Virus record (IMG/VR): IMGVR_UViG_3300005289_000016
Location: 124,001 to 188,000 of that record
Reading direction: 5' to 3' (one strand)
DNA: 64,000 nucleotides
In this document: positions 43,601 through 63,777 of the stretch, piece after piece
How the letters are laid out: each line of letters begins with the position of its first letter
How positions within the stretch are numbered: position 1 is the stretch's first letter
Notes under the pieces: generated by a model
The model's database searches: none
What the model was told of the DNA's origin: nothing
The model's input: the letters and a program-made list of their open reading frames with translations, nothing else
Position numbers and translations under genes: made by a program

Positions 43601-45640
43601 ATGGACAACCGCATCGAAGCTCTGCGAGCAGAGATCAGTCGTCTGAACCACCTCTATTACAACGAGGGGGAATCAGACGTTGATGATGACGTATACGACT
43701 CCCTCAAAGCTGAGTTGCGCGAGCTTGAAGGGGTAAGTGATGATCCGCTGTCGCCCTTGAACCAAGTGGGTGCGACGGCAGTAGGGGGCTTTGATAAAAT
43801 CAAGCACCTAACACCGATGTTGAGCTTGGGCAACGTCTACAACGAAGAAGAACTGACAGACTGGTGTCTTGGTTTGGGCTACGCTGCCTTTGCGCAGATG
43901 GAACTCAAGCACGACGGTCTGGCGATTGGCCTTCTGTACGACAAAACCAAGCTGAAGTACGCTGCTACCCGTGGCGATGGTGATATTGGTGATGACATCA
44001 CCGAGAATGCCGTGTATTTCGAAGGTGTTCCGGAAGAACTGCCTGAGTTCCCGGGTAAAGTCGAGATCCGGGGTGAAGCCGTCGTACCGCACAAGCACTT
44101 CAAGCGTGTTTGTGAGCTGCGTGAGGCTCAAGGCAAGAAGGTTTACGCCAACCCACGTAACATGGTGGCCGGATTGGCCCGCAAGAAGGAAGGTGCCGAC
44201 CTGATAGGCATGGGGATTCGCTTCATTGCCTACGATGCAGTGGTTCATACCCCTGTCGGACCGATTTCAGTGCCCATGTCGTACTTCAGTCCTGAAGTTC
44301 AGGCTCGGTTCCACATCTCCCTGCCAGTTTGGGAAGGGTTGACCAGCGATATTGGCAACATCATCGAGACAATCGAGGATGTCACCGAGGATCGCCCCAA
44401 CTTAGGACACGACATCGACGGCTTGGTGATCAAACTGGTCAAACCAGCTGAGCGTCAGACCCTCGGACAGCGCTCTACGTCTCCTCGGTGGGCTACAGCG
44501 TTCAAGTTTGAGGCTCAGACTGCCACAACGATCCTGGAAAGTGTCGAAGTGCAGGTCGGTCGGACTGGTGTATTGACTCCGGTGGCTAAAATCCGTCCAG
44601 TGAAGCTTTGTGGCGTGACGATCTCGTCTGTCACCCTGCACAACTTCGAGGAAATCGAGCGTCTTGACTTGCGGATTGGCGATACCGTGGTGGTTTCTCG
44701 TCGTGGTGACGTGATTCCGAAGATCGAGAGCGTGGTGATTGCGCTGCGGGTCGATGAACACGGTGTAGTTCGCACTCCAGTTGAGTGTCCGTGCTGTGGA
44801 TCGAAGGTGACCAAGCGGGATGTGGGCAAAGAGGAGGGGGTGAAGCTGTTCTGCACCAACTTGATCAACTGTCCAGCCCAGCTTATCAACCGGATGGCGT
44901 ACTTCGTCAGCCGCGATGGCATCGACGTGAAGAACTTAGGACCTGCTGCGGTTGAATCGCTGATCGCCACCGGGGTTCTGGGCTCGTTCAGCTCGTTGTT
45001 CTACCTGTCCGAGCAGGATTTCTACGCTGCGGGTATAGGTGAGGCCATGACGGACAAGATCATTGCTGGTCTGAACCGTTGCAAGAAGCTGCCGTTCTAC
45101 AAAGCACTGCGGGCTGTGGGGATTCCCGACGTCGGAGACAGCACTGCACGTGCCTTGGCTCAACGTTTCCCAAGCTTCCGTGATCTTGGCAAGGCCAGCT
45201 TCAAGACCTTGCAGGAAGTAGACGACGTAGGTCCTGCCGTAGCGACCAGCATCATGCTGACGTACATCGCCAACGACAGTGATCTGCATGCGCTCGACAG
45301 TATCTTCACATACACCGACGTGGCTATTCCGAAAGCAGCAGTTCAGGACCTTGCCGGTAAGACGGTCGTGGTCAGTGGCTCTGACTTCGATGGCATGACT
45401 CGTCGGGCGATGGAAGACGATGTGTTCTCACGGGGCGGTAAGCTGACCAAGAGCGTGAGCAAGAACACTGACATCCTCTATGCAGGGATTGGTGCTGGAC
45501 CTGACAAAGTCAGGAAGGCCAAGGAGCTGGGTTTCATCGAAGATGGGATCAAGTTCACCAACCCTAACTCTCTTACCACGCTGTCCTCAACCGACAACGG
45601 ACTTACACCTATCGCAACAGGAGATACCGATGAGCAATGA
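43601..45640 (+). CDS. ligA: NAD+-dependent DNA ligase
   Basis: YY..G.S.V.D..YD, PMLSL, ELKHDG (KxDG), EIRGE, NPRN..AG, DIDGLVIK, QVGRTG..TPVA, CPCCGS..C....CPAQ zinc finger, BRCT-like SVSKNTD. Confidence 0.95.
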   Translation: MDNRIEALRAEISRLNHLYYNEGESDVDDDVYDSLKAELRELEGVSDDPLSPLNQVGATAVGGFDKIKHLTPMLSLGNVYNEEELTDWCLGLGYAAFAQMELKHDGLAIGLLYDKTKLKYAATRGDGDIGDDITENAVYFEGVPEELPEFPGKVEIRGEAVVPHKHFKRVCELREAQGKKVYANPRNMVAGLARKKEGADLIGMGIRFIAYDAVVHTPVGPISVPMSYFSPEVQARFHISLPVWEGLTSDIGNIIETIEDVTEDRPNLGHDIDGLVIKLVKPAERQTLGQRSTSPRWATAFKFEAQTATTILESVEVQVGRTGVLTPVAKIRPVKLCGVTISSVTLHNFEEIERLDLRIGDTVVVSRRGDVIPKIESVVIALRVDEHGVVRTPVECPCCGSKVTKRDVGKEEGVKLFCTNLINCPAQLINRMAYFVSRDGIDVKNLGPAAVESLIATGVLGSFSSLFYLSEQDFYAAGIGEAMTDKIIAGLNRCKKLPFYKALRAVGIPDVGDSTARALAQRFPSFRDLGKASFKTLQEVDDVGPAVATSIMLTYIANDSDLHALDSIFTYTDVAIPKAAVQDLAGKTVVVSGSDFDGMTRRAMEDDVFSRGGKLTKSVSKNTDILYAGIGAGPDKVRKAKELGFIEDGIKFTNPNSLTTLSSTDNGLTPIATGDTDEQ

Positions 45641-46085
45641 ACTGATCATGTTTGATCGCCCCTTGACCGTGGCAGAGGCCGTAGCCAAGGCGCCTGACCA
45701 CAACAATGCATTGGGCTGGGGTATCCAGTCCATGGTGGTCGACACGGTTCGCTCGATGGTGTTGCTGGCCGCTGCACGCTCGGAGCATTTCCGTTATGCT
45801 CTGGGCGTCACGCCTGGCATCGCGCAGTATCTGTACGATCTGCCGGACGGGGCCATCACCAACCCAGATCACTTCAAGCGTACCGAGCAAGTCGGTAGCC
45901 TGATCGGCCACTTCGATAACCAAGAAGTGCATGCCATTCAGGAACTCACCCCCGAAGAGGACCAAGGGCTCATGCTCCTGGTTCTCAACGACGACAAACT
46001 CGCCGTGGGCTACCTCTACACGCAGTTGCGTGAATACGGCGACCACATCAACGTCAACAACATCCTGCCGAAGAAGACCAACTAA
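45630..46085 (+). CDS. hypothetical protein
   Basis: AGGAG RBS before MSNEL. Confidence 0.8.
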   Translation: MSNELIMFDRPLTVAEAVAKAPDHNNALGWGIQSMVVDTVRSMVLLAAARSEHFRYALGVTPGIAQYLYDLPDGAITNPDHFKRTEQVGSLIGHFDNQEVHAIQELTPEEDQGLMLLVLNDDKLAVGYLYTQLREYGDHINVNNILPKKTN

Positions 46086-46678
46086 TGACCATCTTCAACA
46101 CCATCGTAGAAGCCCTGAAACCCCTGTCCAGCGACGACGTCCAACTGACTGTCGCTGGTAAAGAAGGCCATGGCAACCAGAACGTGCGCGTGCATTACAA
46201 GCGCGACAACCTGCTGTCGAAAGTCCTGTACCGTGCTGACCTGTCGGCGCTGGGTGCTGACTCCGAAGAAATGAAGCTGTACATCGGTGGGCTGACTCGT
46301 CCTCAGCAATCGCCATGGACCTCGCTGCCGGGCAAGGCACAAGTCCAGTTGACCGCTATCCTGAAAGCGGCCAGCATCGACAAGGACATGTTCCTGGACG
46401 CGTCGAACGACGTGGCCATGGCCGTGCTGGAAGCCTACGAGAAGTTCGACCGTACTCACGCGTTCGTTCGTCAGTGGCAAGCAGCAGGCAAGGGCATCGG
46501 CCTGGAAGTGATCGTGGTGTTCAAAGATGGCGAACAATTCGCTGTGTTCGAATCCTCGCTGAACTTCTACATCGAGCCGGATGCGGAGAAACTGATCCGT
46601 GTCCTGCGCGAGCGTAAGGAAGGCACCAAGGCACCTGAAGTCAAGGTCGTCGACGCTGGTGTCGTAACCACCGTTTAA
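46085..46678 (+). CDS. hypothetical protein
   Basis: TAATG coupling; strong codon bias. Confidence 0.85.
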   Translation: MTIFNTIVEALKPLSSDDVQLTVAGKEGHGNQNVRVHYKRDNLLSKVLYRADLSALGADSEEMKLYIGGLTRPQQSPWTSLPGKAQVQLTAILKAASIDKDMFLDASNDVAMAVLEAYEKFDRTHAFVRQWQAAGKGIGLEVIVVFKDGEQFAVFESSLNFYIEPDAEKLIRVLRERKEGTKAPEVKVVDAGVVTTV

Positions 46679-46693
46679 GGAGCATCATTCGGC

Positions 46694-47215
46694 ATGAGGA
46701 TCAGTCTGATCTATGCCCAGAACGAAGATGGGGCGATCGGCTTAGCCGGCCCCCATCCACTTCCGTGGCACCACCCTGAAGACCTGGCACGGTTTAAGGA
46801 ACTGACGATGGGCAAGCCGCTACTCATGGGCATGAACACCTTCGACAGCCTCCCTAGACTGTTACCAGGTCGCTTCCATTTTGTGCTGACTCGCGGGAAA
46901 GGTCTCCCTCGACTCGGTCGATTGGCAAGTGTACAATTTCTGAACAGTATCGCCGCATCGTTGTTGGCATGCCGTGACCTTGACATGAAGGAACTCTTCG
47001 TGATCGGAGGCTCGTCTATCCTGAACACCATGATCGGTAGAGCTGACACCATTTATCGGACTATGGTCCTCAACACTCCGCTCGAAGGCGATCTTGCCAA
47101 GGTGCACATGCCAGAGCATGAACATCCGGCATGGAAACAGTACGAGTGCGTCAAGACTGAATACGTCGAAGATCGCCTTGTATTCCAGACCTTCGAGCTA
47201 AAACACCAAGGGTAA
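46694..47215 (+). CDS. folA: dihydrofolate reductase
   Basis: AIG....LPW..EDL..FK..T.GK...MG..T..SLP..LPGR...VLT; FVIGG. Confidence 0.92.
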   Translation: MRISLIYAQNEDGAIGLAGPHPLPWHHPEDLARFKELTMGKPLLMGMNTFDSLPRLLPGRFHFVLTRGKGLPRLGRLASVQFLNSIAASLLACRDLDMKELFVIGGSSILNTMIGRADTIYRTMVLNTPLEGDLAKVHMPEHEHPAWKQYECVKTEYVEDRLVFQTFELKHQG

Positions 47216-47642: not shown

Positions 47643-48800
47643 ATGGCTACTCCAGCTCAGTTGGCTGCAAAGCTGAGTACCCTGTTGGTTTCGATCAAGA
47701 ACAAGATCAATGGGAAACTCGATAGTGGAGCACGAGCAGCGGACTCCTCCAAGCTGGAGGGCCTCACTCTTGCTCAGGTCATGGCTAAGACCGTCACTGA
47801 TAACCTTGCCCAAGTCAACGGCCGTAGAGGCGAATCCGCATTCTTCAGTCAAGACGGTACACCGGGCGCACTGGTCGGAGCAGAGATGCTCACCTCAATG
47901 CGCATGGCATCTGACGACACCGCAATCGCTAACTTGAAAAGCGGTACGGTGTCGTTCTCAGACGTGTTCACCAAATGGAGCCGTATCAGTCACGGCACAA
48001 ACGGTCTGTTCCCAAGCATCCCTGCTGAACTGGATGGATGGTCCTACGACAGTGCCACCGACAGCATTGCCTCCACCATCAATAGCGTCAGCATGATCGG
48101 TATCATCAGTACCGACCGTTTCGACAGCTACGAGTTCGAGACAATCATGTCGTCGACTTCCAACGACGACGATGCCATCGGCATGTGCTTGGCCTTCAAG
48201 AAGGTCGGCGATAAAGAGCACAGTCTGACAGTCTTTGTCAGCACCGGCGGGATGAACGCACTTGGTCAGATTGCCAATGGTCAGACGCCTAAGTTGGTGG
48301 TTGTTGTCAACGCGGGTCAGACTGGCGCACAAGGGCAGCAGGTATTGGCGGTGCGGGAACTTGGCTCACCGGCCTCTGGGTTCAGTGGGATCAACTACTC
48401 TGCTGGCATTCGGGTTGTAGCCAAGCGCAGCATCACCGGCCTGATCGAAATCACTTGCACCAAAGCAGACGGTTCTGCATGGCCCAATCCAGTGTCGTGG
48501 TCGGGTTCTCTGCCAGCAATCTTCCAGAGCAAGTGCGCAATCGGTTATGTATCGATCTCCCAACCGTCGTCGACGTGGAAGAACATCAAGCTTCCCGTCT
48601 CCAAACGGGACATCATCGACACTCGTGATCTCACCGTGTGGCGGTTTACCAATAACGCTTGGGTCAATGCCGGTAAGGCGAACAACCCCGATGTCCTGCC
48701 TCCTGGTCGGATGTACAAGAACACCGAAGGTAACATGGGCTCGTACTACCTTGACTTTGAGGGTAACTTCGTGACGCTGGGGTTATCGGCGGTACCGTAA
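47643..48800 (+). CDS. tail-fibre-like virion protein, paralogue A
   Basis: MATP.QL..KL..L..SI..K...KLD..A.AADSSKLEG; high similarity to the next gene. Confidence 0.75.
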   Translation: MATPAQLAAKLSTLLVSIKNKINGKLDSGARAADSSKLEGLTLAQVMAKTVTDNLAQVNGRRGESAFFSQDGTPGALVGAEMLTSMRMASDDTAIANLKSGTVSFSDVFTKWSRISHGTNGLFPSIPAELDGWSYDSATDSIASTINSVSMIGIISTDRFDSYEFETIMSSTSNDDDAIGMCLAFKKVGDKEHSLTVFVSTGGMNALGQIANGQTPKLVVVVNAGQTGAQGQQVLAVRELGSPASGFSGINYSAGIRVVAKRSITGLIEITCTKADGSAWPNPVSWSGSLPAIFQSKCAIGYVSISQPSSTWKNIKLPVSKRDIIDTRDLTVWRFTNNAWVNAGKANNPDVLPPGRMYKNTEGNMGSYYLDFEGNFVTLGLSAVP

Positions 48801-48825: not shown

Positions 48826-49992
48826 ATGGCCACTCCTACGCAATTGTCCGTCAAACTGGACACACTCTTTAAATCGATCAGCACCAAGCTTTCCAGTAAA
48901 CTGGATCTAGCCTCTGTTGCTGCCGATTCGTCTAAACTCGAAGGCATGACCTTGGCACAGGTCGGGGCCCTGACTGTCACCGACCAACTCGCTCAAGTCA
49001 ATGGACGTAAGGGTGAGATGGCATTCTTCAGTCAAGACGGTACGCCCATGGCACTGGAAGGCGGTGAAATGGTCGTCCAGTTGCGCATGGCTTCGGACGA
49101 TGCCGCCATCGATGCATTGAAAAGTGCTACGGTATCATTCGAGGACATCTTCAACAAGTGGGGACGAATCAGCCACAGTAACCAGCTCATCTTTCCACAC
49201 AACGTGACGGAGATGAACAGTTGGTCTTACGATCAGCCAACCGATTCTGTCCTGTCGACCGTGAATAGCGGAACAATGATTGGATTGATCAGTCCTGATC
49301 GGTTTGACCAATACACCTTCGAGACTAGCTTCAAGTCCACCAACGGGGATGATGACGCCATCGGCATGTGTGCTGCCTTTAAAAAGGTAGGAGACCGTGA
49401 GTACACGGTCTCGGTGTTGGTCAGTCCTCGTGGAATGAACCCTGACGGTAGTTACAACACCGCAGGCACTCCTCGAATCTGGTGCACCGTCAACTACAAC
49501 CAAGGTGCTGCTAACGGGATGGTGGTACTGTGGACCCAAGAGTTGGGCATTGCAGCATCGCCGTGGAACTCTGGTGAAATCGCAGCAGGTATTCGGGTTA
49601 AGGTAGTGCGTCGAGCTGGCGGTCTGTTGGAGATCACCTCTACCAGACCAGACGGCTCTCCGTGGCCTAACCCGGTATTCACTACGGTGCAGCTACCTAC
49701 CATGTTCCTCTCCAAATGCTCCATCGGGTACTTGGCCACTTCTCAACCAGCCTCCACCTGGCAGAACTTCCAAGTACCAACCGCCAAGACCGACATCGTG
49801 GACAAACGCGACATGACAGTCTGGCGATGGAACAACACCACAGGCACTTGGGTCAATGCCGGCAAGATGAGTAACCCGGCAGTCATGACTCCCGGACGCA
49901 TCTACAAGGATACCCAGCCCCCGTATTACGGGGCGTACTACCTTGATTTCGACGGCAACCTCGTGACAATTGGGCAGCCTTCTCAGTTGTAA
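48826..49992 (+). CDS. tail-fibre-like virion protein, paralogue B
   Basis: Collinear with 47643-48800 (DDDAIGMC.AFKKVGD, YYLDF.GN.VT). Confidence 0.75.
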   Translation: MATPTQLSVKLDTLFKSISTKLSSKLDLASVAADSSKLEGMTLAQVGALTVTDQLAQVNGRKGEMAFFSQDGTPMALEGGEMVVQLRMASDDAAIDALKSATVSFEDIFNKWGRISHSNQLIFPHNVTEMNSWSYDQPTDSVLSTVNSGTMIGLISPDRFDQYTFETSFKSTNGDDDAIGMCAAFKKVGDREYTVSVLVSPRGMNPDGSYNTAGTPRIWCTVNYNQGAANGMVVLWTQELGIAASPWNSGEIAAGIRVKVVRRAGGLLEITSTRPDGSPWPNPVFTTVQLPTMFLSKCSIGYLATSQPASTWQNFQVPTAKTDIVDKRDMTVWRWNNTTGTWVNAGKMSNPAVMTPGRIYKDTQPPYYGAYYLDFDGNLVTIGQPSQL

Positions 49993-52111: not shown

Positions 52112-52585
52112 ATGGTTGAGAAGTCGGATGTAGGCGTTGCAGACGTGTCCCAGCACGTTCGTGTGGGTGTCGGTGTGATCATCATGCGTGGCACCAAGAT
52201 CCTCATGGGTAAGCGCAAGGGCAGCCATGGAGCTGGCACCTACTCTGTCCCGGGTGGTCATCTGGAGTTCGGTGAAACTGTTGGCACCTGCGCCAAACGT
52301 GAAGTGTTGGAAGAGACTGGTATCGTCCTGCACGACCCGTTGTTCCAGGCCGGGTTCACCAACGATCACTTCAAAGAGGAAAGCAAGCATTATGCTACCC
52401 TCTTTGTGGCGTCTCGTTTCAACGAAGGTGAGCCGCAGAATCTCGAGCCCGAGAAGTGCGAAGGCTGGGACTGGTACGATCTGGCTGAACTGCCAGAGCC
52501 TCTGTTCCTGCCGTTCAAGAACTACATGGAAAAGGTCTACGTGAGCCTCAAGGTAAACGAAGGCATGACCCGACTGGGGGCTTGA
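52112..52585 (+). CDS. Nudix hydrolase (MutT/NUDT15-like)
   Basis: Nudix box GHLEFGETVGTCAKREVLEETG; VGVGV; NLEPEKCEGW. Confidence 0.92.
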   Translation: MVEKSDVGVADVSQHVRVGVGVIIMRGTKILMGKRKGSHGAGTYSVPGGHLEFGETVGTCAKREVLEETGIVLHDPLFQAGFTNDHFKEESKHYATLFVASRFNEGEPQNLEPEKCEGWDWYDLAELPEPLFLPFKNYMEKVYVSLKVNEGMTRLGA

Positions 52586-57295: not shown

Positions 57296-58036
57296 ATGCA
57301 AACCGTACCTGCAACCGTATTTGGCATCGCACGTAACGACGAAGTCGTCCAGATGTCGAGCCCAGATAACTACACGTTTCTTCCACTGCCCGGCGACTGG
57401 AAGCTGGCTGTGCTGAATGAAGCTGTGTTTTCCATGCTGGTCGAAAACGGCCATACCGAATTCGGCGTCATGTACAGCCCCGAAGCCGAGAAAGCATTCG
57501 GTTACATCGAACCCGACTTGACCAAGATCTCCCTCGATAAGGTCAAGCGGTTCTACGTCGATCCAACCACAGCTCACTTCTTGGGCTTGATGCTGGATTG
57601 GTCCACCGTTGGCATTGACGGCGGGACTTACGATGACCGAGATGGCAGGAACTGGACTCCGGTTGAAGACGAATGCTGGCACGGCGACATTGACTCCGTG
57701 ATCCTCAACCTCGTCATGCCGAAAGACGGCGGTGGCGCTTGCGGTTGTGGTGACAATGCCGGTGCGGTTGAAGCACTGGGCAAGTTCATCGAAACGCAGC
57801 GCAATCACCCGATCATCGTCACCGATGAAGCCCGTGACAAAGCCCGCAATGAAACCCTGTACGACAAAGGGATCAAGGGCAATGCTTTCCTCTTCATCGG
57901 CTACGTCCTGGACGCAGCTGGCTTCACCGAACACGGCGGTTCCGTCTACCACGGTTGGCTCGAACTCAAGGGCGTGTACCTCGCGTTCCTGATTGCCGAG
58001 TCCATCGCAGAAACCGCCCGCGTAAACGCCGAGTAA
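57296..58036 (+). CDS. hypothetical protein
   Basis: AGGA RBS; YVLD..GFTEHG.SVY..W. Confidence 0.85.
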   Translation: MQTVPATVFGIARNDEVVQMSSPDNYTFLPLPGDWKLAVLNEAVFSMLVENGHTEFGVMYSPEAEKAFGYIEPDLTKISLDKVKRFYVDPTTAHFLGLMLDWSTVGIDGGTYDDRDGRNWTPVEDECWHGDIDSVILNLVMPKDGGGACGCGDNAGAVEALGKFIETQRNHPIIVTDEARDKARNETLYDKGIKGNAFLFIGYVLDAAGFTEHGGSVYHGWLELKGVYLAFLIAESIAETARVNAE

Positions 58037-58087
58037 TCGGCGCTTTACCTTCGTACATTCATTCTGAAATTCATCAAGGAACTACCC

Positions 58088-59341
58088 ATGGATCGCAAGG
58101 CTTCTATCAGCATCAACAACTTCGACAACCACATGGTCATCCGCATGAACGATGAGTCCAACCTCATCGACCACGTGCCGGCCATGGTGTACAAGGCTTC
58201 CATAGGTCGTCCTGGCATCATCATGGTCAAGGACCGTCCGAACTTCACCTTGCCTCAACTGCGTTTTGGCAAGCACAATGCCCGCGTCAAGCAGATCACC
58301 GCCAGCTACGACCGTTTCGGTAAAAGCAACGGCGTCCTGCTGCACGGTCTGAAGGGGTCGGGCAAGAGCCTGTTGGCAGAAGAACTGGGTAACTGGATGA
58401 TCGCGCAAGATCTGCCGGTCATCATGGTCACTGAACCCATGGGTGCTGAAGAACTGGGTATCATCATCAAGGCCATCGGTCCTTGCATGGTGTACTTCGA
58501 CGAGTTCGGCAAGACCTACAACGAGAAGGTCGAACGTGAGCGTCTGCTGCCGCTGTTCAGCGACACGTCGTTCCTGGGTGTGATGTTCGTCATCACTGGC
58601 AACGAAGCGGAAGAGTTCTCCGACTACCTGGTCAACCGTCCGCAGCGTTTCCGTTACAACATCGGTTTCGGCACGAGCATCGACCTCGAAACCCTCCACG
58701 ACATCATGTCCAAGATGCAGGTCTCCGAGCATCTGCACAAGGCGTTCGAAGCGTACGTGAAGCGCGAAAGCGGCAAGTTGAACTTCGACTCACTGCTCTG
58801 CGTCATCCGTGAATCGGCTGGCTGCAAAGACGCCATCGAAGTCGCCGACATGTGCGAAATCCTCAACGTGCCAGATTTCCCACGGATGCAGTGGTTCATC
58901 TCGCATGTTGAGGTTGTTGACACTCCGGAAGACTACGTGGGCTTCGGCTACATGATGCACGGTATCCGCCACGGCCGCGGCGACATGTCGATCAAGATCC
59001 AGGAATCTCGCCGTAATGCGGACGTCTCGTTCCTGAGCTTCGGCAACGCTAAGTCCGACCCGCTCCTTAAAGACGCGATGCTGCACATCGAGAACCTCGA
59101 AGAGTCGGAAGGCACTCGCGTGGTCGAGTACAAGGGGCTTCGTACGTTCCGCATCACGCTGACCTACGGCTTTGAGTACAACAGCTCTACGCTCAACCTG
59201 TCCGCTGTTGACTCGTTCAACGAGAAGGACGAAAACAAACTTCCTGGCATCGGGCGCATGCACAGCGAGTCGGTTGTCGTTGACAGCGGTGAACAGGCTG
59301 CCATGTCGGGTAAGCACATCCACGGCCAACGCATCAATTAA
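58088..59341 (+). CDS. AAA+ ATPase
   Basis: Walker A GVLLHGLKGSGKS, Walker B MVYFDE, sensor/SRH FVITGN...NRPQRF. Confidence 0.88.
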   Translation: MDRKASISINNFDNHMVIRMNDESNLIDHVPAMVYKASIGRPGIIMVKDRPNFTLPQLRFGKHNARVKQITASYDRFGKSNGVLLHGLKGSGKSLLAEELGNWMIAQDLPVIMVTEPMGAEELGIIIKAIGPCMVYFDEFGKTYNEKVERERLLPLFSDTSFLGVMFVITGNEAEEFSDYLVNRPQRFRYNIGFGTSIDLETLHDIMSKMQVSEHLHKAFEAYVKRESGKLNFDSLLCVIRESAGCKDAIEVADMCEILNVPDFPRMQWFISHVEVVDTPEDYVGFGYMMHGIRHGRGDMSIKIQESRRNADVSFLSFGNAKSDPLLKDAMLHIENLEESEGTRVVEYKGLRTFRITLTYGFEYNSSTLNLSAVDSFNEKDENKLPGIGRMHSESVVVDSGEQAAMSGKHIHGQRIN

Positions 59342-59381
59342 TCCAACCCGCAACACCAACCCAAAGACTGAGGAGTCTTGC

Positions 59382-59705
59382 ATGAAAATCAAAGATATCG
59401 AGAAGCACCAAGCGATCCTGGCTTTCCTGGCCAAGGACAAGAAACCCTTCGAAGCCTTTGTAGCCAAGGCTGACAAGAAAGAGCTGGTGTTCCAAGTCGA
59501 CAAGACCATCCAGATGTCCGTGGAAGTCGAAGACTACGACAAAACCATCAAGGCCGGCTCCACCATCGCCATCGACGTCGAAACCGGCATCGTGACTCTG
59601 GTAGCCGAAACCGGCGTGGCTCCACAAGCCGAACTGCCGAAGTCCAGCCCTCGCAAATCCTGCTCCTCGCATGCCGAGTTGCAAGAATCCCGCGGCGGCT
59701 ACTAA
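59382..59705 (+). CDS. hypothetical protein
   Basis: GAGGAG RBS. Confidence 0.8.
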   Translation: MKIKDIEKHQAILAFLAKDKKPFEAFVAKADKKELVFQVDKTIQMSVEVEDYDKTIKAGSTIAIDVETGIVTLVAETGVAPQAELPKSSPRKSCSSHAELQESRGGY

Positions 59706-59713
59706 GCCTGCAT

Positions 59714-59748
59714 AGAGAGGACCTTCGGGTCCTCTCTTTATTTTTGGA
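59714..59748 (+). terminator. UUCG terminator
   Basis: AGAGAGGACC-TTCG-GGTCCTCTCT-TTATTTTT. Confidence 0.88.
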
Positions 59749-59754
59749 GTTCGT

Positions 59755-60279
59755 ATGACTGCTATTGTGTACCATGATGGGAAGTTGATCGGCGACCGCA
59801 AGCAGGTGGCCTTAACGATACCTACAGCATTCGAAGACGGTCCTAAGGTCTTCATCAGCCGCGATAAGCAATTCGCTTACGGTGCCACTGGCTCCGCCAT
59901 CCATGATTCCATTCGTGACGAATTGGAAGCACAACTCCGTATGGTTCTTGAACGTCTGGTCCTGGACAAACGAGACGTTGTTCCTCTTGCTGACATCATG
60001 GGTGACGACAAGATTGAATGCTTCACCCACGGCACCGTGATGACGCGTGACCATCAATGGGGCATCATGTCCTACGGTTCTCGCTTTCGTCGCTTAGAAG
60101 GCCATACACACGGCGTAGGGACGGGTGGGACACTGCTGGCCTCCATGTTGGTCTGCGGTATGTCGCTCAAAGACGCCATGCCTGTTGTAGAACGTCTGGA
60201 TCACTTGACCGGCACGAAGGTTGATGTGATTTACGCAAGCCGACTCAAGCCATTTGTTATCAAAGGGACGCCACTGTGA
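59755..60279 (+). CDS. HslV/proteasome-beta-like Ntn hydrolase
   Basis: M-T start (Thr1), ..DG..IGD, downstream K (GPKVF), GVGTGG (GSG motif), D..TG. Confidence 0.6.
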   Translation: MTAIVYHDGKLIGDRKQVALTIPTAFEDGPKVFISRDKQFAYGATGSAIHDSIRDELEAQLRMVLERLVLDKRDVVPLADIMGDDKIECFTHGTVMTRDHQWGIMSYGSRFRRLEGHTHGVGTGGTLLASMLVCGMSLKDAMPVVERLDHLTGTKVDVIYASRLKPFVIKGTPL

Positions 60280-60869
60280 ACTTCCTAATCTATCGCCGCG
60301 GCAAGATCGGTTTCCCTGAAACTCACCATGCCAACGAAGGGGTGCATTTCAAAGTGCTCGAGGCCGACCCTGACACCTACTTCAGTGATCAGGGCTTCAT
60401 CTATCCGCTGTCGGGCACCGGACCTAACATTGCGGACGTTGTCAGCGGACGTCTGCGCATGGCCAACCACCCTCGTGTCTCGATGAGCATGATGGCTTTC
60501 ATGATCACCAAGCAAGGGGCGATCACGCAAGTCGACATCTTCAAGAACAACACTCATCCGGATGAGAAACGCTGGACGTTGGACTTCCATGGGTTGCCTA
60601 AGGGCAATTCCACGTACGTCATGTGCTCAGACACCATGACTCGTGACTCGTTGTTGGGTGCACTGGCCGCGTGGAAGGATGAGGAGAAGTTCCAGAAGGA
60701 CACCAACGCCATGTCGGTCGCTTCAAATTATCCGATCGTGTGGTTTACTGTGGAAGAGATCATTGAACGTCTCAATAAACTCTACCCAGAGACCAACACC
60801 AAAGATGACGAAGACAACACTGCCTCCGGTCACCGCCGTCCCCGTAATCGGCCTCTCCCCCGACGGTAA
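60276..60869 (+). CDS. hypothetical protein (possible degenerate Ntn paralogue)
   Basis: GTGA-coupled to the Ntn gene; MNFLIYRRGK start echoes MTAIVYHDGK. Confidence 0.75.
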   Translation: MNFLIYRRGKIGFPETHHANEGVHFKVLEADPDTYFSDQGFIYPLSGTGPNIADVVSGRLRMANHPRVSMSMMAFMITKQGAITQVDIFKNNTHPDEKRWTLDFHGLPKGNSTYVMCSDTMTRDSLLGALAAWKDEEKFQKDTNAMSVASNYPIVWFTVEEIIERLNKLYPETNTKDDEDNTASGHRRPRNRPLPRR

Positions 60870-60934
60870 AATCACCATCACTTACAGGCCCATAAGCACA
60901 CCGGGTAAATAAATACGTTTTGCTCGTGATCTAT

Positions 60935-61810
60935 GTAGTAGCACTGTGACATCATCCAAGGATAGTGCCATTGTTCGGATCGTTCTTAGGTTCCGTGCGC
61001 CGCATCTGGTCGTCACTACAACGTCTTCTAAAGGCCGTGTCACTCGTGACGCCGCCGAATGAGACGGACGACCCGCCGCGCATTACCGGGACCGTTACAT
61101 CCGTTTCAGTGACTTCGGTGCCCTACCTCACGCATAAGGCGCGTGGAACGGTAGGTGCACCGTAGCACTGGAGACCTAAAATTACTGAGCGCCCATACCC
61201 TGCCCTCTAAGGAGCTACACGATCAGATCCCTTCGCGGCGCCGCCGTGTTGGCTTTGCTTACCTTGTCAGTCGCCCTGTCGGTACAGGCGGAACCTCAAA
61301 AGGACCGCTACCAGGACAAGGCCGTTACTGCGACGTCCGATAAGTCATTTCCTCACCACTCGACACTAGGTCTGTTGAGGGCTGTGCCATCCGTGGCGCG
61401 GTTAGAGGGAGTGCTCTTCATGGCACGTGAGTCGCAGCGACGGATAGCGACAGCTACGACCGGGAAGCCCAGCACGGGCACTGATAGGACTATCCAGCGC
61501 GTGCCTAAGGTGCACGTCGGCTGATCAATAGTCTGAGTTCAGTGAACTACATTGATGACTATTGATTCCGATTGAGTTCGGTTAAATTGGATGGCAATGG
61601 CCTCCAGTCTGATACTGACCTACGACTAAGTAACACAAGGCCTCGCACAATGCGAAGACGCGCTTGGTGAAAGGCCTCGGGGGATGAGGACGACAAGCGC
61701 TACACAGGGTTACGGGGCATCGTCGATAGTCGTTCCTATGGTGGGGTTGATCTCCCATTGAGGTGCGTCCGAACGATTGCCCCAAGACTTCTCTTTCTTT
61801 TTTTTGTTTT
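60935..61810 (+). ncRNA. candidate large structured non-coding RNA (about 870 nt)
   Basis: About 980-nt gap without a credible gene; starts at TATG; many nested helices; ends in a stem plus long U-tract. Confidence 0.6.
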
Positions 61811-63405: not shown

Positions 63406-63777
63406 ATGCGTCCTTTGAAACAAGCAATCTACTCCAGCCGTACTGCTGACAAGTTCGTTGTTCGTCTGCCTGATGGCATGCGTGAACGTATCGCAGAGGT
63501 TGCTAGGGATCACCATCGCTCAATGAACAGCGAGATCATTGCTCGCTTAGAGAAGAGCCTGGACCTGCCGGACGCTGAAGTGTTTGAAGTAGAAGCCCCG
63601 GAGGGTTCCATCTGGAATCCTTCCCTTCACAACTTGGTTCGTACCAAGGGTGGACAAATGGGCACTATCACGGAGTTCCGTGAAGTGTACAACAAGACAG
63701 CCGTCATCCAGGCTAAATTGGATCATCTGCATTGGCATGATCTCGGTGACTTGAAGCCGGTGTTTGTCAAAGCGTAA
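63406..63777 (+). CDS. amrZ: AmrZ (AlgZ)-like Arc/ribbon-helix-helix transcription regulator
   Basis: [52 protein letters not shown] is near-identical to the Pseudomonas AmrZ N-terminal domain as I recall it; C-terminal half unrelated. Confidence 0.9.

What the first reader, a model, noticed from the sequence alone, without database searches (positions are those of the whole stretch)
58088..60279. AAA+ ATPase near an HslV/proteasome-like Thr-nucleophile hydrolase: possible phage protease machine
Seen: intact Walker A/B ATPase; two genes later a protein with Thr at position 2, G.D, a downstream Lys and G-T-G-G. A terminator (59714) separates them. Established: Ntn Thr1/Asp/Lys plus GSG define HslV and proteasome beta subunits, which partner AAA+ unfoldases. 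Inference: a phage HslUV-like protease that could destroy host defence proteins. With the SspB gene, this suggests a proteolysis-control theme.
Basis: partly seen in the sequence, partly recalled or inferred. Interest (0 to 1): 0.6.

Follow-up and report, generated by a model that had tools for sequence, protein, structure and literature searches.

The report
Phage HslV-like protease cassette beside AAA ATPase
A jumbo phage encodes a real but very divergent HslV/proteasome-type threonine protease whose constant companions are two small unknown genes, while the neighbouring AAA+ ATPase is a Cdc48-like (not HslU-like) enzyme that is an optional partner at most.

Summary
ORF 58088-59341 is an intact AAA+ ATPase. 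ORF 59755-60279 is an HslV-type N-terminal-threonine hydrolase: a pLDDT 96.9 model matches HslV at Z 12.7, and Thr2, Asp14, Lys31, Gly46 and G-T-G-G 122-125 are conserved. A strong hairpin at 59714 lies between them.

The protease belongs to a large, mostly phage family (at least 262 clusters) that Pfam does not detect. It sits in a conserved cassette: a small tailed protein (g107), the hairpin, the HslV-like gene, and an overlapping 197-aa gene (g197). That cassette recurs in distant phages, often without this ATPase.

The ATPase is a classic-clade AAA, closest to the Cdc48/p97/VAT D2 domain. It lacks the aromatic pore-loop residue and HslU's hallmarks, and its family occurs in hundreds of phages with no HslV-like gene. 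Complete sister genomes keep the ATPase but have no protease.

Within one ATPase subclade, however, the cassette lies within 10 kb of the ATPase whenever both were found, in at least four gene orders. A facultative ATPase-protease link is therefore plausible (about 0.4). An HslUV-like machine is unproven, and I found no evidence for any role against host defences.

The parts
58088..59341 (+). AAA+ ATPase, 417 aa. It has an N-terminal domain (about residues 1-75), a classic-clade AAA core (about 78-195), a lid, a clade-specific beta-rich C-terminal part, and a disordered tail.
   Evidence: PHROG 2376 at 6e-51 and Pfam PF00004 at 21.5 bits. A 40-sequence profile matches Cdc48/p97/VAT D2 in the PDB at 7e-12. 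The invariant motifs are listed.
58346..58369 (+). Walker A (P-loop), residues 87-94
   Evidence: G87, G90, G92, K93 and S94 are invariant in alignment A4.
58487..58504 (+). Walker B, residues 134-139, ending D138-E139
   Evidence: D138 and E139 are invariant in A4.
58637..58651 (+). Second region of homology, R184-P185-Q-R187-F188 (arginine fingers). This is typical of the classic AAA clade.
   Evidence: R184, P185, R187 and F188 are invariant. They align with the RPGR motif of Cdc48 D2.
59382..59705 (+). g107: a small protein with a beta-rich N-terminal part and a Pro/Ala/Lys-rich C-terminal tail. The tail carries a short conserved S-P-x-R-x-C/A-like motif.
   Evidence: A homologue lies immediately upstream of the HslV-like gene in nearly every locus examined. 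It also persists after the ATPase in genomes that lack the protease.
59714..59747 (+). Strong stem-loop (10 bp, UUCG loop) followed by a T-run. It looks like a terminator or attenuator between g107 and the HslV-like gene.
   Evidence: A hairpin sits at the same position, with unrelated stem sequences, in DT01, L007, L013 and L025. Contigs of a relative in an RNA library break here (this is weak evidence).
59755..60279 (+). HslV-like N-terminal-nucleophile (Thr) hydrolase, 174 aa. Key residues: Thr2 (59758-59760), Asp14 (59794-59796), Lys31 (59845-59847), G-T-G-G 122-125 (60118-60129).
   Evidence: PHROG 1040 'peptidase HslV family' at 2e-10, and 8e-12 in the six-frame search. The AF2 model has pLDDT 96.9. 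Foldseek gives HslV at 2.7e-6 with TM 0.6. VIA gives Z 12.7, with model residue 2 on HslV Thr1. The profile matches PDB HslV sequences at 1.7e-6.
60276..60869 (+). g197: a 197-aa protein of unknown fold. Its GTG start overlaps the protease stop by 4 nt, which suggests translational coupling. It is possibly a degenerate paralogue or regulatory subunit of the protease.
   Evidence: Family HMMs hit the gene directly downstream of the HslV-like gene in L001, L002, L004-L008, L013, L014, L024, L039, L045-L056, L115 and L116. The complex prediction gave weak support. Collinear hhalign gives E 0.013, which is not significant.

Best explanation
The functional unit is a three-gene phage cassette: g107, a hairpin, the HslV-like Thr protease, and g197.

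Shown:
- The 174-aa protein has the HslV fold.
- Thr is exposed by simple removal of Met1.
- The Asp/Lys/Gly/G-T-G catalytic set is conserved.
- The cassette and the intergenic hairpin are conserved in phages whose protease is only 20-35% identical.

Inferred:
- The protein is an active peptidase, probably ring-forming like HslV.
- g197, which appears translationally coupled, binds it as a regulator or a catalytically dead subunit.
- The hairpin lets g107 be made in excess, as an adaptor or as a substrate whose conserved C-terminal tail enters the protease.

The upstream ATPase is a classic-clade AAA (Cdc48/VAT-like core, non-canonical pore loop) from a broad phage family that has a job of its own. 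In this jumbo-phage lineage it probably also cooperates with the cassette, by remodelling or delivering clients. I see it as a facultative partner, not as a dedicated HslU equivalent.
For: Fold and active site.

N-terminus: 113 of the 150 best relatives begin MT and 31 begin MS.

Cassette: the g197 and g107 family HMMs hit the flanking genes in distant loci. A 4-nt start/stop overlap links the protease and g197. The hairpin is conserved in position but not in sequence.

HslV-like plus g197 complex prediction:
- Score 0.54 against a best control of 0.00.
- That mark was reached by 58 of 80 solved complexes and 2 of 110 mismatched pairs.
- At 0.60 or under, only 7 of the 80 solved complexes passed, and so did both passing mismatches.
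- The runs agree in at least 89% of contacts, and the partner's pLDDT is at least 74.

ATPase link:
- All ATPases next to an HslV-like gene fall in one well-supported clade of the ATPase tree (SH-aLRT 99; 19 of its 38 rows). None of the 46 rows in the other clade has an HslV-like gene nearby. The label needs 5 changes on the tree against a shuffled mean of 16.6.
- At least four gene orders keep the genes within 0.5-9 kb, while the other flanking genes differ.
- Non-orthologous PF00004 AAAs flank the cassette in L116 (three) and L025 (one).
Against: - No activity, assembly or interaction has been measured.
- The complex prediction gives only weak support, and it was run with my own alignments.
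- Pfam PF00227 does not recognise the protein. Only 1 of 147 relatives hits it.
- The ATPase persists without the protease in complete sister genomes G004 and G005, in the syntenic L114, and in G007-G009, EFDG1 and vB_BceM_WH1.
- The cassette persists without this ATPase in PCH45 (whole genome) and in L013, L014, L022, L117 and L118.
- Pore-loop 1 has no aromatic residue. That argues against a processive unfoldase.
- Clustering on the tree partly reflects shared ancestry.
Confidence: 0.5

Rival explanations
1. The ATPase hexamer caps an HslV-like double ring to form a dedicated ATP-dependent, HslUV-like protease that degrades host (defence) proteins.
For: The genes are adjacent in the window and its relatives. 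Proximity recurs in several gene orders within one ATPase subclade. The ATPase's nearest solved relatives, Cdc48 and VAT, are unfoldases, and from my own knowledge they can feed 20S proteasomes.
Against: The ATPase has no HslU hallmarks and no aromatic pore loop. Each gene occurs without the other in complete genomes. A hairpin and the g107 gene separate them. I have no evidence about substrates. I did not test the ATPase-protease pair by complex prediction.
Confidence: 0.2
2. The cassette is self-sufficient and the ATPase is functionally unrelated. Its neighbourhood is then only inherited synteny or clustering of early genes. The protease would work alone or with g197, as the stand-alone proteasome homologues BPH and Anbu are thought to, or as a dedicated processing enzyme for the g107 tail.
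For: The cassette occurs without the ATPase in six lineages. The ATPase is a backbone gene in syntenic DT01-like genomes, where the cassette behaves as an indel. The ATPase family is in 350 phage records, against 3 records for the HslV-like protein by tblastn.
Against: Wherever both genes were found in one genome they lie within 10 kb, in at least four arrangements with otherwise different flanks. Other AAA ATPases sit next to the cassette in L116 and L025.
Confidence: 0.2
3. The phage HslV-like protein works with, or poisons, the host's own HslU. It would replace host HslV to redirect or block host proteolysis.
For: It has HslV's size and fold and an unprocessed Met-Thr start. Other jumbo phages are reported to carry HslV homologues but no HslU (PMC7823757).
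Against: It is only about 15% identical to bacterial HslV. I did not test whether the HslU-tail pocket is conserved. The conserved phage-encoded partners g107 and g197 point to a self-contained system.
Confidence: 0.07
4. The protein is not a degradative protease. It would instead be a Thr-nucleophile transpeptidase or ligase, as the archaeal proteasome relative Connectase is (my own knowledge), acting on the conserved tail of g107.
For: g107 is always upstream and has a disordered tail with a short conserved motif. The hairpin suggests that g107 is made in excess.
Against: No similarity to Connectase emerged. The top structural matches are HslV, then proteasome beta, BPH and Anbu.
Confidence: 0.05

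Closest known systems
Bacterial HslV (ClpQ), e.g. E. coli 1e94/4g4e, T. maritima 1m4y, T. brucei 4hnz
   Same: Same Ntn fold: Z 12.4-12.7, rmsd 3.3-3.6 A over about 150 of 174 residues. Same size. Thr follows Met1 directly, with no propeptide. The Asp, Lys, Gly and G-S/T-G-G positions align.
   Different: Only about 15% identity. Pfam PF00227 does not detect it. There is no hslU next to it. It always sits between g107 and g197. Ring assembly is untested.
HslU, the ATPase partner of HslV
   Same: Both are P-loop AAA+ proteins with Walker A, Walker B and arginine fingers.
   Different: The phage ATPase belongs to the classic AAA clade, with an RPxRF second region of homology. It has no AAA_2 or ClpB_D2-small match, no I-domain and no GYVG pore loop.
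Cdc48/p97/VAT D2 domains (classic AAA unfoldases; VAT and Cdc48 can partner archaeal 20S proteasomes, from my own knowledge)
   Same: These are the best solved sequence relatives of the ATPase core, at 7e-12 to 1e-10 over residues 77-192.
   Different: The phage protein has a single AAA domain and an unrelated N-terminal domain. The segment between Walker A and Walker B is short. E-P-M-G sits where Cdc48 has its aromatic pore loop.
HslV homologues already annotated in phages: pPa_SNUABM_DT01 gp290 'putative protease HslV', Salmonella phage pSal-SNUABM-04 ORF1/116, Erwinia phage RAY gp116, Serratia phage Moabite
   Same: DT01 gp290 is the 38%-identical orthologue in the same gene order. These are phage HslV-fold proteins, and none has been tested functionally (PMC7823757; bioRxiv 10.1101/2023.02.24.529968).
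   Different: None of these papers describes the g107/g197 cassette, the hairpin or the link to the AAA ATPase. The DT01 paper does not mention the protease at all.
BPH and Anbu (stand-alone bacterial proteasome homologues)
   Same: Same fold at Z 10.8-11.0. Neither has a known dedicated AAA partner (my own knowledge).
   Different: They score lower than HslV, are longer, and sit in different operon contexts.

Membership tests
HslV / proteasome-beta Ntn hydrolases | alpha-beta-beta-alpha Ntn fold | tested here: met
   The model has pLDDT 96.9. Foldseek gives 250 hits with E<1e-3, and every listed match is HslV, proteasome or BPH. VIA gives Z 12.7 to HslV.
HslV / proteasome-beta Ntn hydrolases | N-terminal Thr nucleophile (Thr1 after removal of Met or a propeptide) | tested here: met
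   Thr2 aligns with HslV Thr1. 144 of 150 relatives start MT or MS.
HslV / proteasome-beta Ntn hydrolases | Asp17, Lys33, Gly45/47 and Gly-Ser-Gly equivalents | tested here: met
   D14, K31 and G122 are invariant and G46 is nearly invariant in 147 sequences. They align to D, K, G and GSGG of T. brucei HslV. Here the motif reads G-T-G-G.
HslV / proteasome-beta Ntn hydrolases | Recognised by the curated family model (Pfam PF00227) | tested here: not met
   The window protein gives no Pfam hit, and only 1 of 147 relatives hits PF00227, at 0.0037. PHROG 1040 does recognise it, at 2e-10.
HslV / proteasome-beta Ntn hydrolases | Self-compartmentalising ring assembly (two stacked hexamers in HslV) | not tested
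   The single complex job went to the HslV-like/g197 pair, and six copies exceed the size limit.
HslV / proteasome-beta Ntn hydrolases | Peptidase activity that depends on Thr1 | not testable with these tools
   This needs an enzyme assay with a Thr2Ala control.
HslUV two-component protease | Partner ATPase of the HslU type (HCLR clade, I-domain, GYVG pore loop, C-terminal tail docking) | tested here: not met
   The Pfam hits are AAA (PF00004) and generic P-loop families only. The nearest solved relatives are Cdc48/p97/VAT. The pore-loop position reads E-P-M-G.
HslUV two-component protease | Consistent co-occurrence of the protease and ATPase genes | tested here: inconclusive
   The genes are linked within one ATPase subclade, in at least four gene orders. 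Each is also found alone in complete genomes.
Classic-clade AAA ATPases (Cdc48/FtsH/katanin type) | Walker A, Walker B, sensor-1 and a second region of homology with two arginines | tested here: met
   G87-S94, D138-E139, N172 and R184/R187 are invariant. The profile matches Cdc48 D2 at 7e-12.
Classic-clade AAA ATPases (Cdc48/FtsH/katanin type) | Aromatic-hydrophobic-Gly pore loop 1 for polypeptide translocation | tested here: not met
   The aligned position is E-P-M-G. Across the family only the hydrophobic residue is conserved, and an aromatic residue appears in 2 of 40 sequences.

The most novel reading that the evidence does not exclude
Jumbo phages carry their own minimal proteasome-like system. 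It would consist of a catalytic HslV-like subunit, a degenerate tandem paralogue (g197) acting as a non-catalytic subunit, and a small abundantly made protein (g107) whose conserved C-terminal tail acts as a tag, adaptor or gate. A recruitable Cdc48-like AAA ATPase would be replaced by non-orthologous AAAs in other lineages. This would be a viral, modular analogue of AAA-proteasome machines, used to remodel the host or phage proteome.
Probability: 0.15. Interest if true: 0.8.

Novelty: new variant of a known kind. Interest (0 to 1): 0.5.

Why it matters
HslV-like genes in jumbo phages have been annotated in passing but never studied. This analysis shows three things.
- They form a large, mostly viral family that Pfam does not detect, with an intact catalytic set.
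- They travel in a fixed three-gene cassette with a conserved hairpin.
- In one phage group the cassette is repeatedly placed next to a Cdc48-like AAA ATPase.

If the parts work together, this would be a phage-encoded compartmentalised protease that is built differently from HslUV, ClpXP or Lon. It could act on host proteins, including defence proteins, or on phage proteins. The system can be tested directly, because culturable relatives exist: pPa_SNUABM_DT01 on P. aeruginosa, and JPTI55 on P. fluorescens SBW25.

Tried and rejected
- Megablast of the region against the phage collection found nothing.
- Neither the single sequence nor the shallow 14-sequence profile found HslV in the PDB.
- The first AF2 model, from 14 sequences, had a poor N-terminus. 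It gave only E >= 0.065 and Z 6.3 to HslV. I replaced it with the 147-sequence model.
- The search for related loci with the 147-sequence alignment failed because no block was conserved enough. The 23-sequence version added only two loci.
- The idea that g197 is a paralogue of the protease is not significant. BLASTP gives E 0.30. hhalign gives probabilities of 0.7% and 3%. The end-to-end collinear alignment gives E 0.013, against 0.22 for a reversed control. I keep it only as a hypothesis.
- A BFVD hit, A0A5P8D542 (200 aa, probability 0.95), may be PCH45's g197 homologue. I could not verify this.
- The ESM Atlas gave nothing usable for g197 (its own model has pLDDT 0.35) or for the ATPase C-terminus.
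- A conserved tail motif in the ATPase (M/L-L-S-x-K-H) does not track presence of the cassette. L114 has the motif but no cassette.
- Pfam's SspB model found no match in the genome.
- No public run holds more than 18% of the region's sampled words. The one RNA library holds only a relative, as contigs, so I could not map transcript ends.
- The ATPase/HslV-like pair, and homo-oligomers of either protein, were not sent to complex prediction. Only one job was allowed, and I used it for the pair I judged likeliest to bind.
Full report
CONTEXT

The window is bases 124001-188000 of a 276,032-bp IMG/VR phage record that CheckV rates as complete. It is a jumbo phage related to Pseudomonas phage pPa_SNUABM_DT01 (265.5 kb). 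DT01 has the same local gene order: a DUF8224-like 627-aa gene, a Nudix-like gene, a 246-aa gene, the ATPase, a small gene, a 'putative protease HslV', and a roughly 190-aa gene. Close relatives come from compost, soil and rhizosphere metagenomes. A DT01-like jumbo phage, JPTI55, has been isolated on P. fluorescens SBW25 from compost (bioRxiv 10.1101/2024.08.29.610337).

OBSERVATION

- The 417-aa ORF 58088-59341 has Walker A (residues 87-94), Walker B (134-139), sensor-1 N172 and an R-P-x-R-F arginine-finger motif (184-188). All are invariant in 40 homologues.
- It matches PHROG 2376 'ATPase' at 6e-51 and just passes Pfam AAA.
- The next real gene is g107 (59382-59705). It has its own Shine-Dalgarno sequence.
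- Then comes a 10-bp UUCG hairpin with a T-run at 59714-59747.
- The 174-aa ORF 59755-60279 follows.
- A 197-aa ORF (60276-60869) comes last. Its GTG start overlaps the previous stop by 4 nt.

THE 174-AA PROTEIN IS AN HSLV-TYPE NTN HYDROLASE

- Pfam sees nothing, but PHROG 1040 'peptidase HslV family' matches at 2e-10. The same model in a six-frame search of the genome gives 8e-12. In the control genomes it matches those that have HslV or a proteasome.
- A word-based search found only 15 close relatives. A model built from them was poor at the N-terminus.
- Pfam and the PDB profile had left the protein open, so I ran the exhaustive profile search. It found 262 clusters at E <= 1e-3.
- Of the best 150, 113 begin Met-Thr and 31 begin Met-Ser.
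- In an alignment of 147 of them, the invariant columns are M1, D14, K31 and G122, with G46 nearly invariant.
- That profile matches PDB HslV sequences (T. brucei 1.7e-6, B. subtilis 6.9e-5). The Asp, Lys, Gly and G-S/T-G-G positions are in register.
- Refolding with this alignment gave pLDDT 96.9 and pTM 0.91.
- Foldseek then returned HslV of T. maritima at 2.7e-6 (TM 0.6) and 250 matches below 1e-3. Every listed match is HslV, proteasome or BPH.
- VIA-align gave Z 12.4-12.7 to HslV (rmsd 3.3-3.6 A, about 150 residues), with model residue 2 on Thr1. Proteasome beta, Anbu and BPH score 10.6-11.5.
- The nearest ESM Atlas and BFVD structures are mostly phage proteins. A few are annotated as HslV or proteasome subunits.

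The fold and the catalytic residues are therefore established. Enzymatic activity and ring assembly are inferred.

THE ATPASE IS NOT HSLU-LIKE

- The family profile's best solved relatives are the D2 domains of Cdc48/p97 and the archaeal VAT (7e-12 to 1e-10).
- The R-P-x-R-F motif places the protein in the classic AAA clade.
- There are no AAA_2 or ClpB_D2-small hits.
- In the alignment to Cdc48 D2, the aromatic-hydrophobic-Gly pore loop corresponds to E-P-M-G. Across 40 homologues only the hydrophobic residue is kept.
- The family is widespread. 350 phage records carry it, including Enterococcus, Bacillus, Staphylococcus, Lactococcus and E. coli phages of 90-150 kb and several jumbo phages. 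All are annotated simply as 'ATPase'.
- By contrast, only three records carry the HslV-like protein at tblastn sensitivity.

WHAT TRAVELS WITH THE PROTEASE

HMMs built from the window's genes were run over every fetched locus.
- The gene directly downstream of the HslV-like gene belongs to the g197 family. This holds in DT01, PCH45 and the IMG/VR relatives, and in distant metagenomic loci: L013 at 8.9e-9 before it was added to the model, L024 at 1.6e-26, and L116 at 2.8e-7.
- The gene directly upstream belongs to the g107 family in almost all of them.
- g107 has a small beta-rich domain and a disordered tail with a short conserved motif.
- Between g107 and the protease there is a strong hairpin in the window, L004-L006, DT01, L007, L013 and L025. 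Its stem sequences are unrelated between lineages (z-scores -1.5 to -7.3).
- In a peat metatranscriptome library, contigs of a roughly 90%-similar relative cover 58001-59702 and 59685-61000 and break at the hairpin. Contigs cannot prove transcript ends, so this is only a hint.
- Complex prediction for the HslV-like protein and g197 gave weak support. The score was 0.54 against a best control of 0.00. That mark was reached by 58 of 80 solved complexes and 2 of 110 mismatched pairs. At 0.60 or under, only 7 of the 80 solved complexes passed, as did both passing mismatches. The runs agree in at least 89% of contacts, and the partner's pLDDT is at least 74.
- g197 may be a degenerate duplicate of the protease. 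Its N-terminus and a C-terminal segment align collinearly with it. The statistics are not significant, with E 0.013 against 0.22 for a reversed control.

IS THE ATPASE A PARTNER?

Evidence for:
- Among the 80 best ATPase loci in IMG/VR, 18 have cassette genes within 10 kb.
- On an ATPase tree, every HslV-linked ATPase falls in one well-supported clade (SH-aLRT 99) of 38 rows. The other 46 rows have none.
- Four gene orders occur: (a) ATPase-g107-protease-g197; (b) protease-g197, then 1-2 kb, then the ATPase; (c) protease, then 0.5 kb, then the ATPase; (d) protease-g197, then about 8.5 kb, then the ATPase.
- Between orders (a) and (b), only these genes are shared among the 13 window genes tested. 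This is therefore not general synteny.
- Non-orthologous PF00004 AAA genes also flank the cassette in L116 (three within 5 kb) and L025 (one).

Evidence against an obligate pair:
- Complete genomes G004 and G005 are the sister lineage of the window's clade. They keep the ATPase and a g107-like gene but have no HslV-like gene anywhere.
- G007, G008 and G009 likewise have no HslV-like gene.
- The syntenic 267-kb contig behind L114 has the ATPase but no cassette and no remnant of one.
- EFDG1 and vB_BceM_WH1 have the ATPase family but no HslV-like gene. DT01 and PCH45 served as positive controls in the same search.
- Conversely, the complete PCH45 genome has the cassette but no ATPase of this family.
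- L013, L014, L022/23, L117 and L118 show none within 6-10 kb.

VERDICT

The 'HslUV-like machine' is not established. The ATPase is a different kind of AAA protein, it has a role of its own, and the protease's constant partners are g107 and g197.

A facultative functional link between the cassette and AAA ATPases is plausible. I put it at about 0.4, and a direct capped complex at about 0.2. I found no evidence about substrates or host defence. Pfam's SspB model finds no SspB in this genome.

Phage HslV homologues have been noted before without functional work (PMC7823757; bioRxiv 10.1101/2023.02.24.529968; the DT01 GenBank annotation). I found no paper in the held library that describes the cassette, its hairpin or its association with an AAA ATPase.

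Noticed in passing
window 63406-63777 (+): This 123-aa protein has an Arc-like ribbon-helix-helix DNA-binding domain (PF03869, 3.6e-22), about 2.5 kb downstream of the cassette. The distant cassette locus L014 also has an Arc-domain gene about 3.6 kb downstream (L014 10190-10558).
   Followed up: partly
window 43601-47215 and 52112-52585 (+): A nucleotide-metabolism block: NAD-dependent DNA ligase (43601-45640), DHFR (46694-47215) and a Nudix hydrolase (52112-52585). It is syntenic with DT01-like jumbo phages (L114, L115).
   Followed up: partly
window 47643-48800 and 48826-49992 (+): Two tandem paralogous genes (385 and 388 aa) match PHROG families annotated as virion structural or tail-fibre proteins (1e-27 to 1e-31), inside an otherwise metabolic region.
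   Followed up: no
window 61246-61524 (+): A small ORF with a signal-peptide-like N-terminus and a conserved C-terminal end has conserved counterparts in L004-L006 (about 90 aa each). It gives no Pfam hit.
   Followed up: no
L116 2086-10902 (Logan contig): In a distant relative, the g107/HslV-like/g197 cassette is flanked by three PF00004 AAA ATPases (507, 471 and 424 aa). Their segments between Walker A and Walker B are short, with no canonical pore loop. A Hint-domain protein (476 aa) lies there too.
   Followed up: partly
L022/L023 3755-4399: A second, weak HslV-like paralogue (E 1.6e-7 to the family profile) lies about 6 kb upstream of the main HslV-like gene in two IMG/VR phage contigs.
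   Followed up: no
L028 (Enterococcus phage EFDG1, NC_029009.1 46639-55418): In this Herelleviridae phage, the homologous ATPase gene sits in the middle of the phage's tRNA gene cluster, with no protease nearby.
   Followed up: no
G001 (genome of L007): L010 and L011; contig IMGVR_UViG_3300046665_000434: L041 and L049: Two jumbo-phage genomes each carry two paralogues of the ATPase. In each, only one copy lies next to the HslV-like cassette.
   Followed up: partly
window 59150-59341 (ATPase C-terminal tail) and the tails of g107 (59630-59705) and g197 (60800-60869): All three neighbours of the protease end in disordered tails rich in basic or Ser/Gly residues. Each tail has a short motif conserved among close relatives: M/L-L-S-x-K-H in the ATPase, S-P-x-R-x-C in g107, and S-G-H-R-R in g197. 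Their meaning is unknown.
   Followed up: partly
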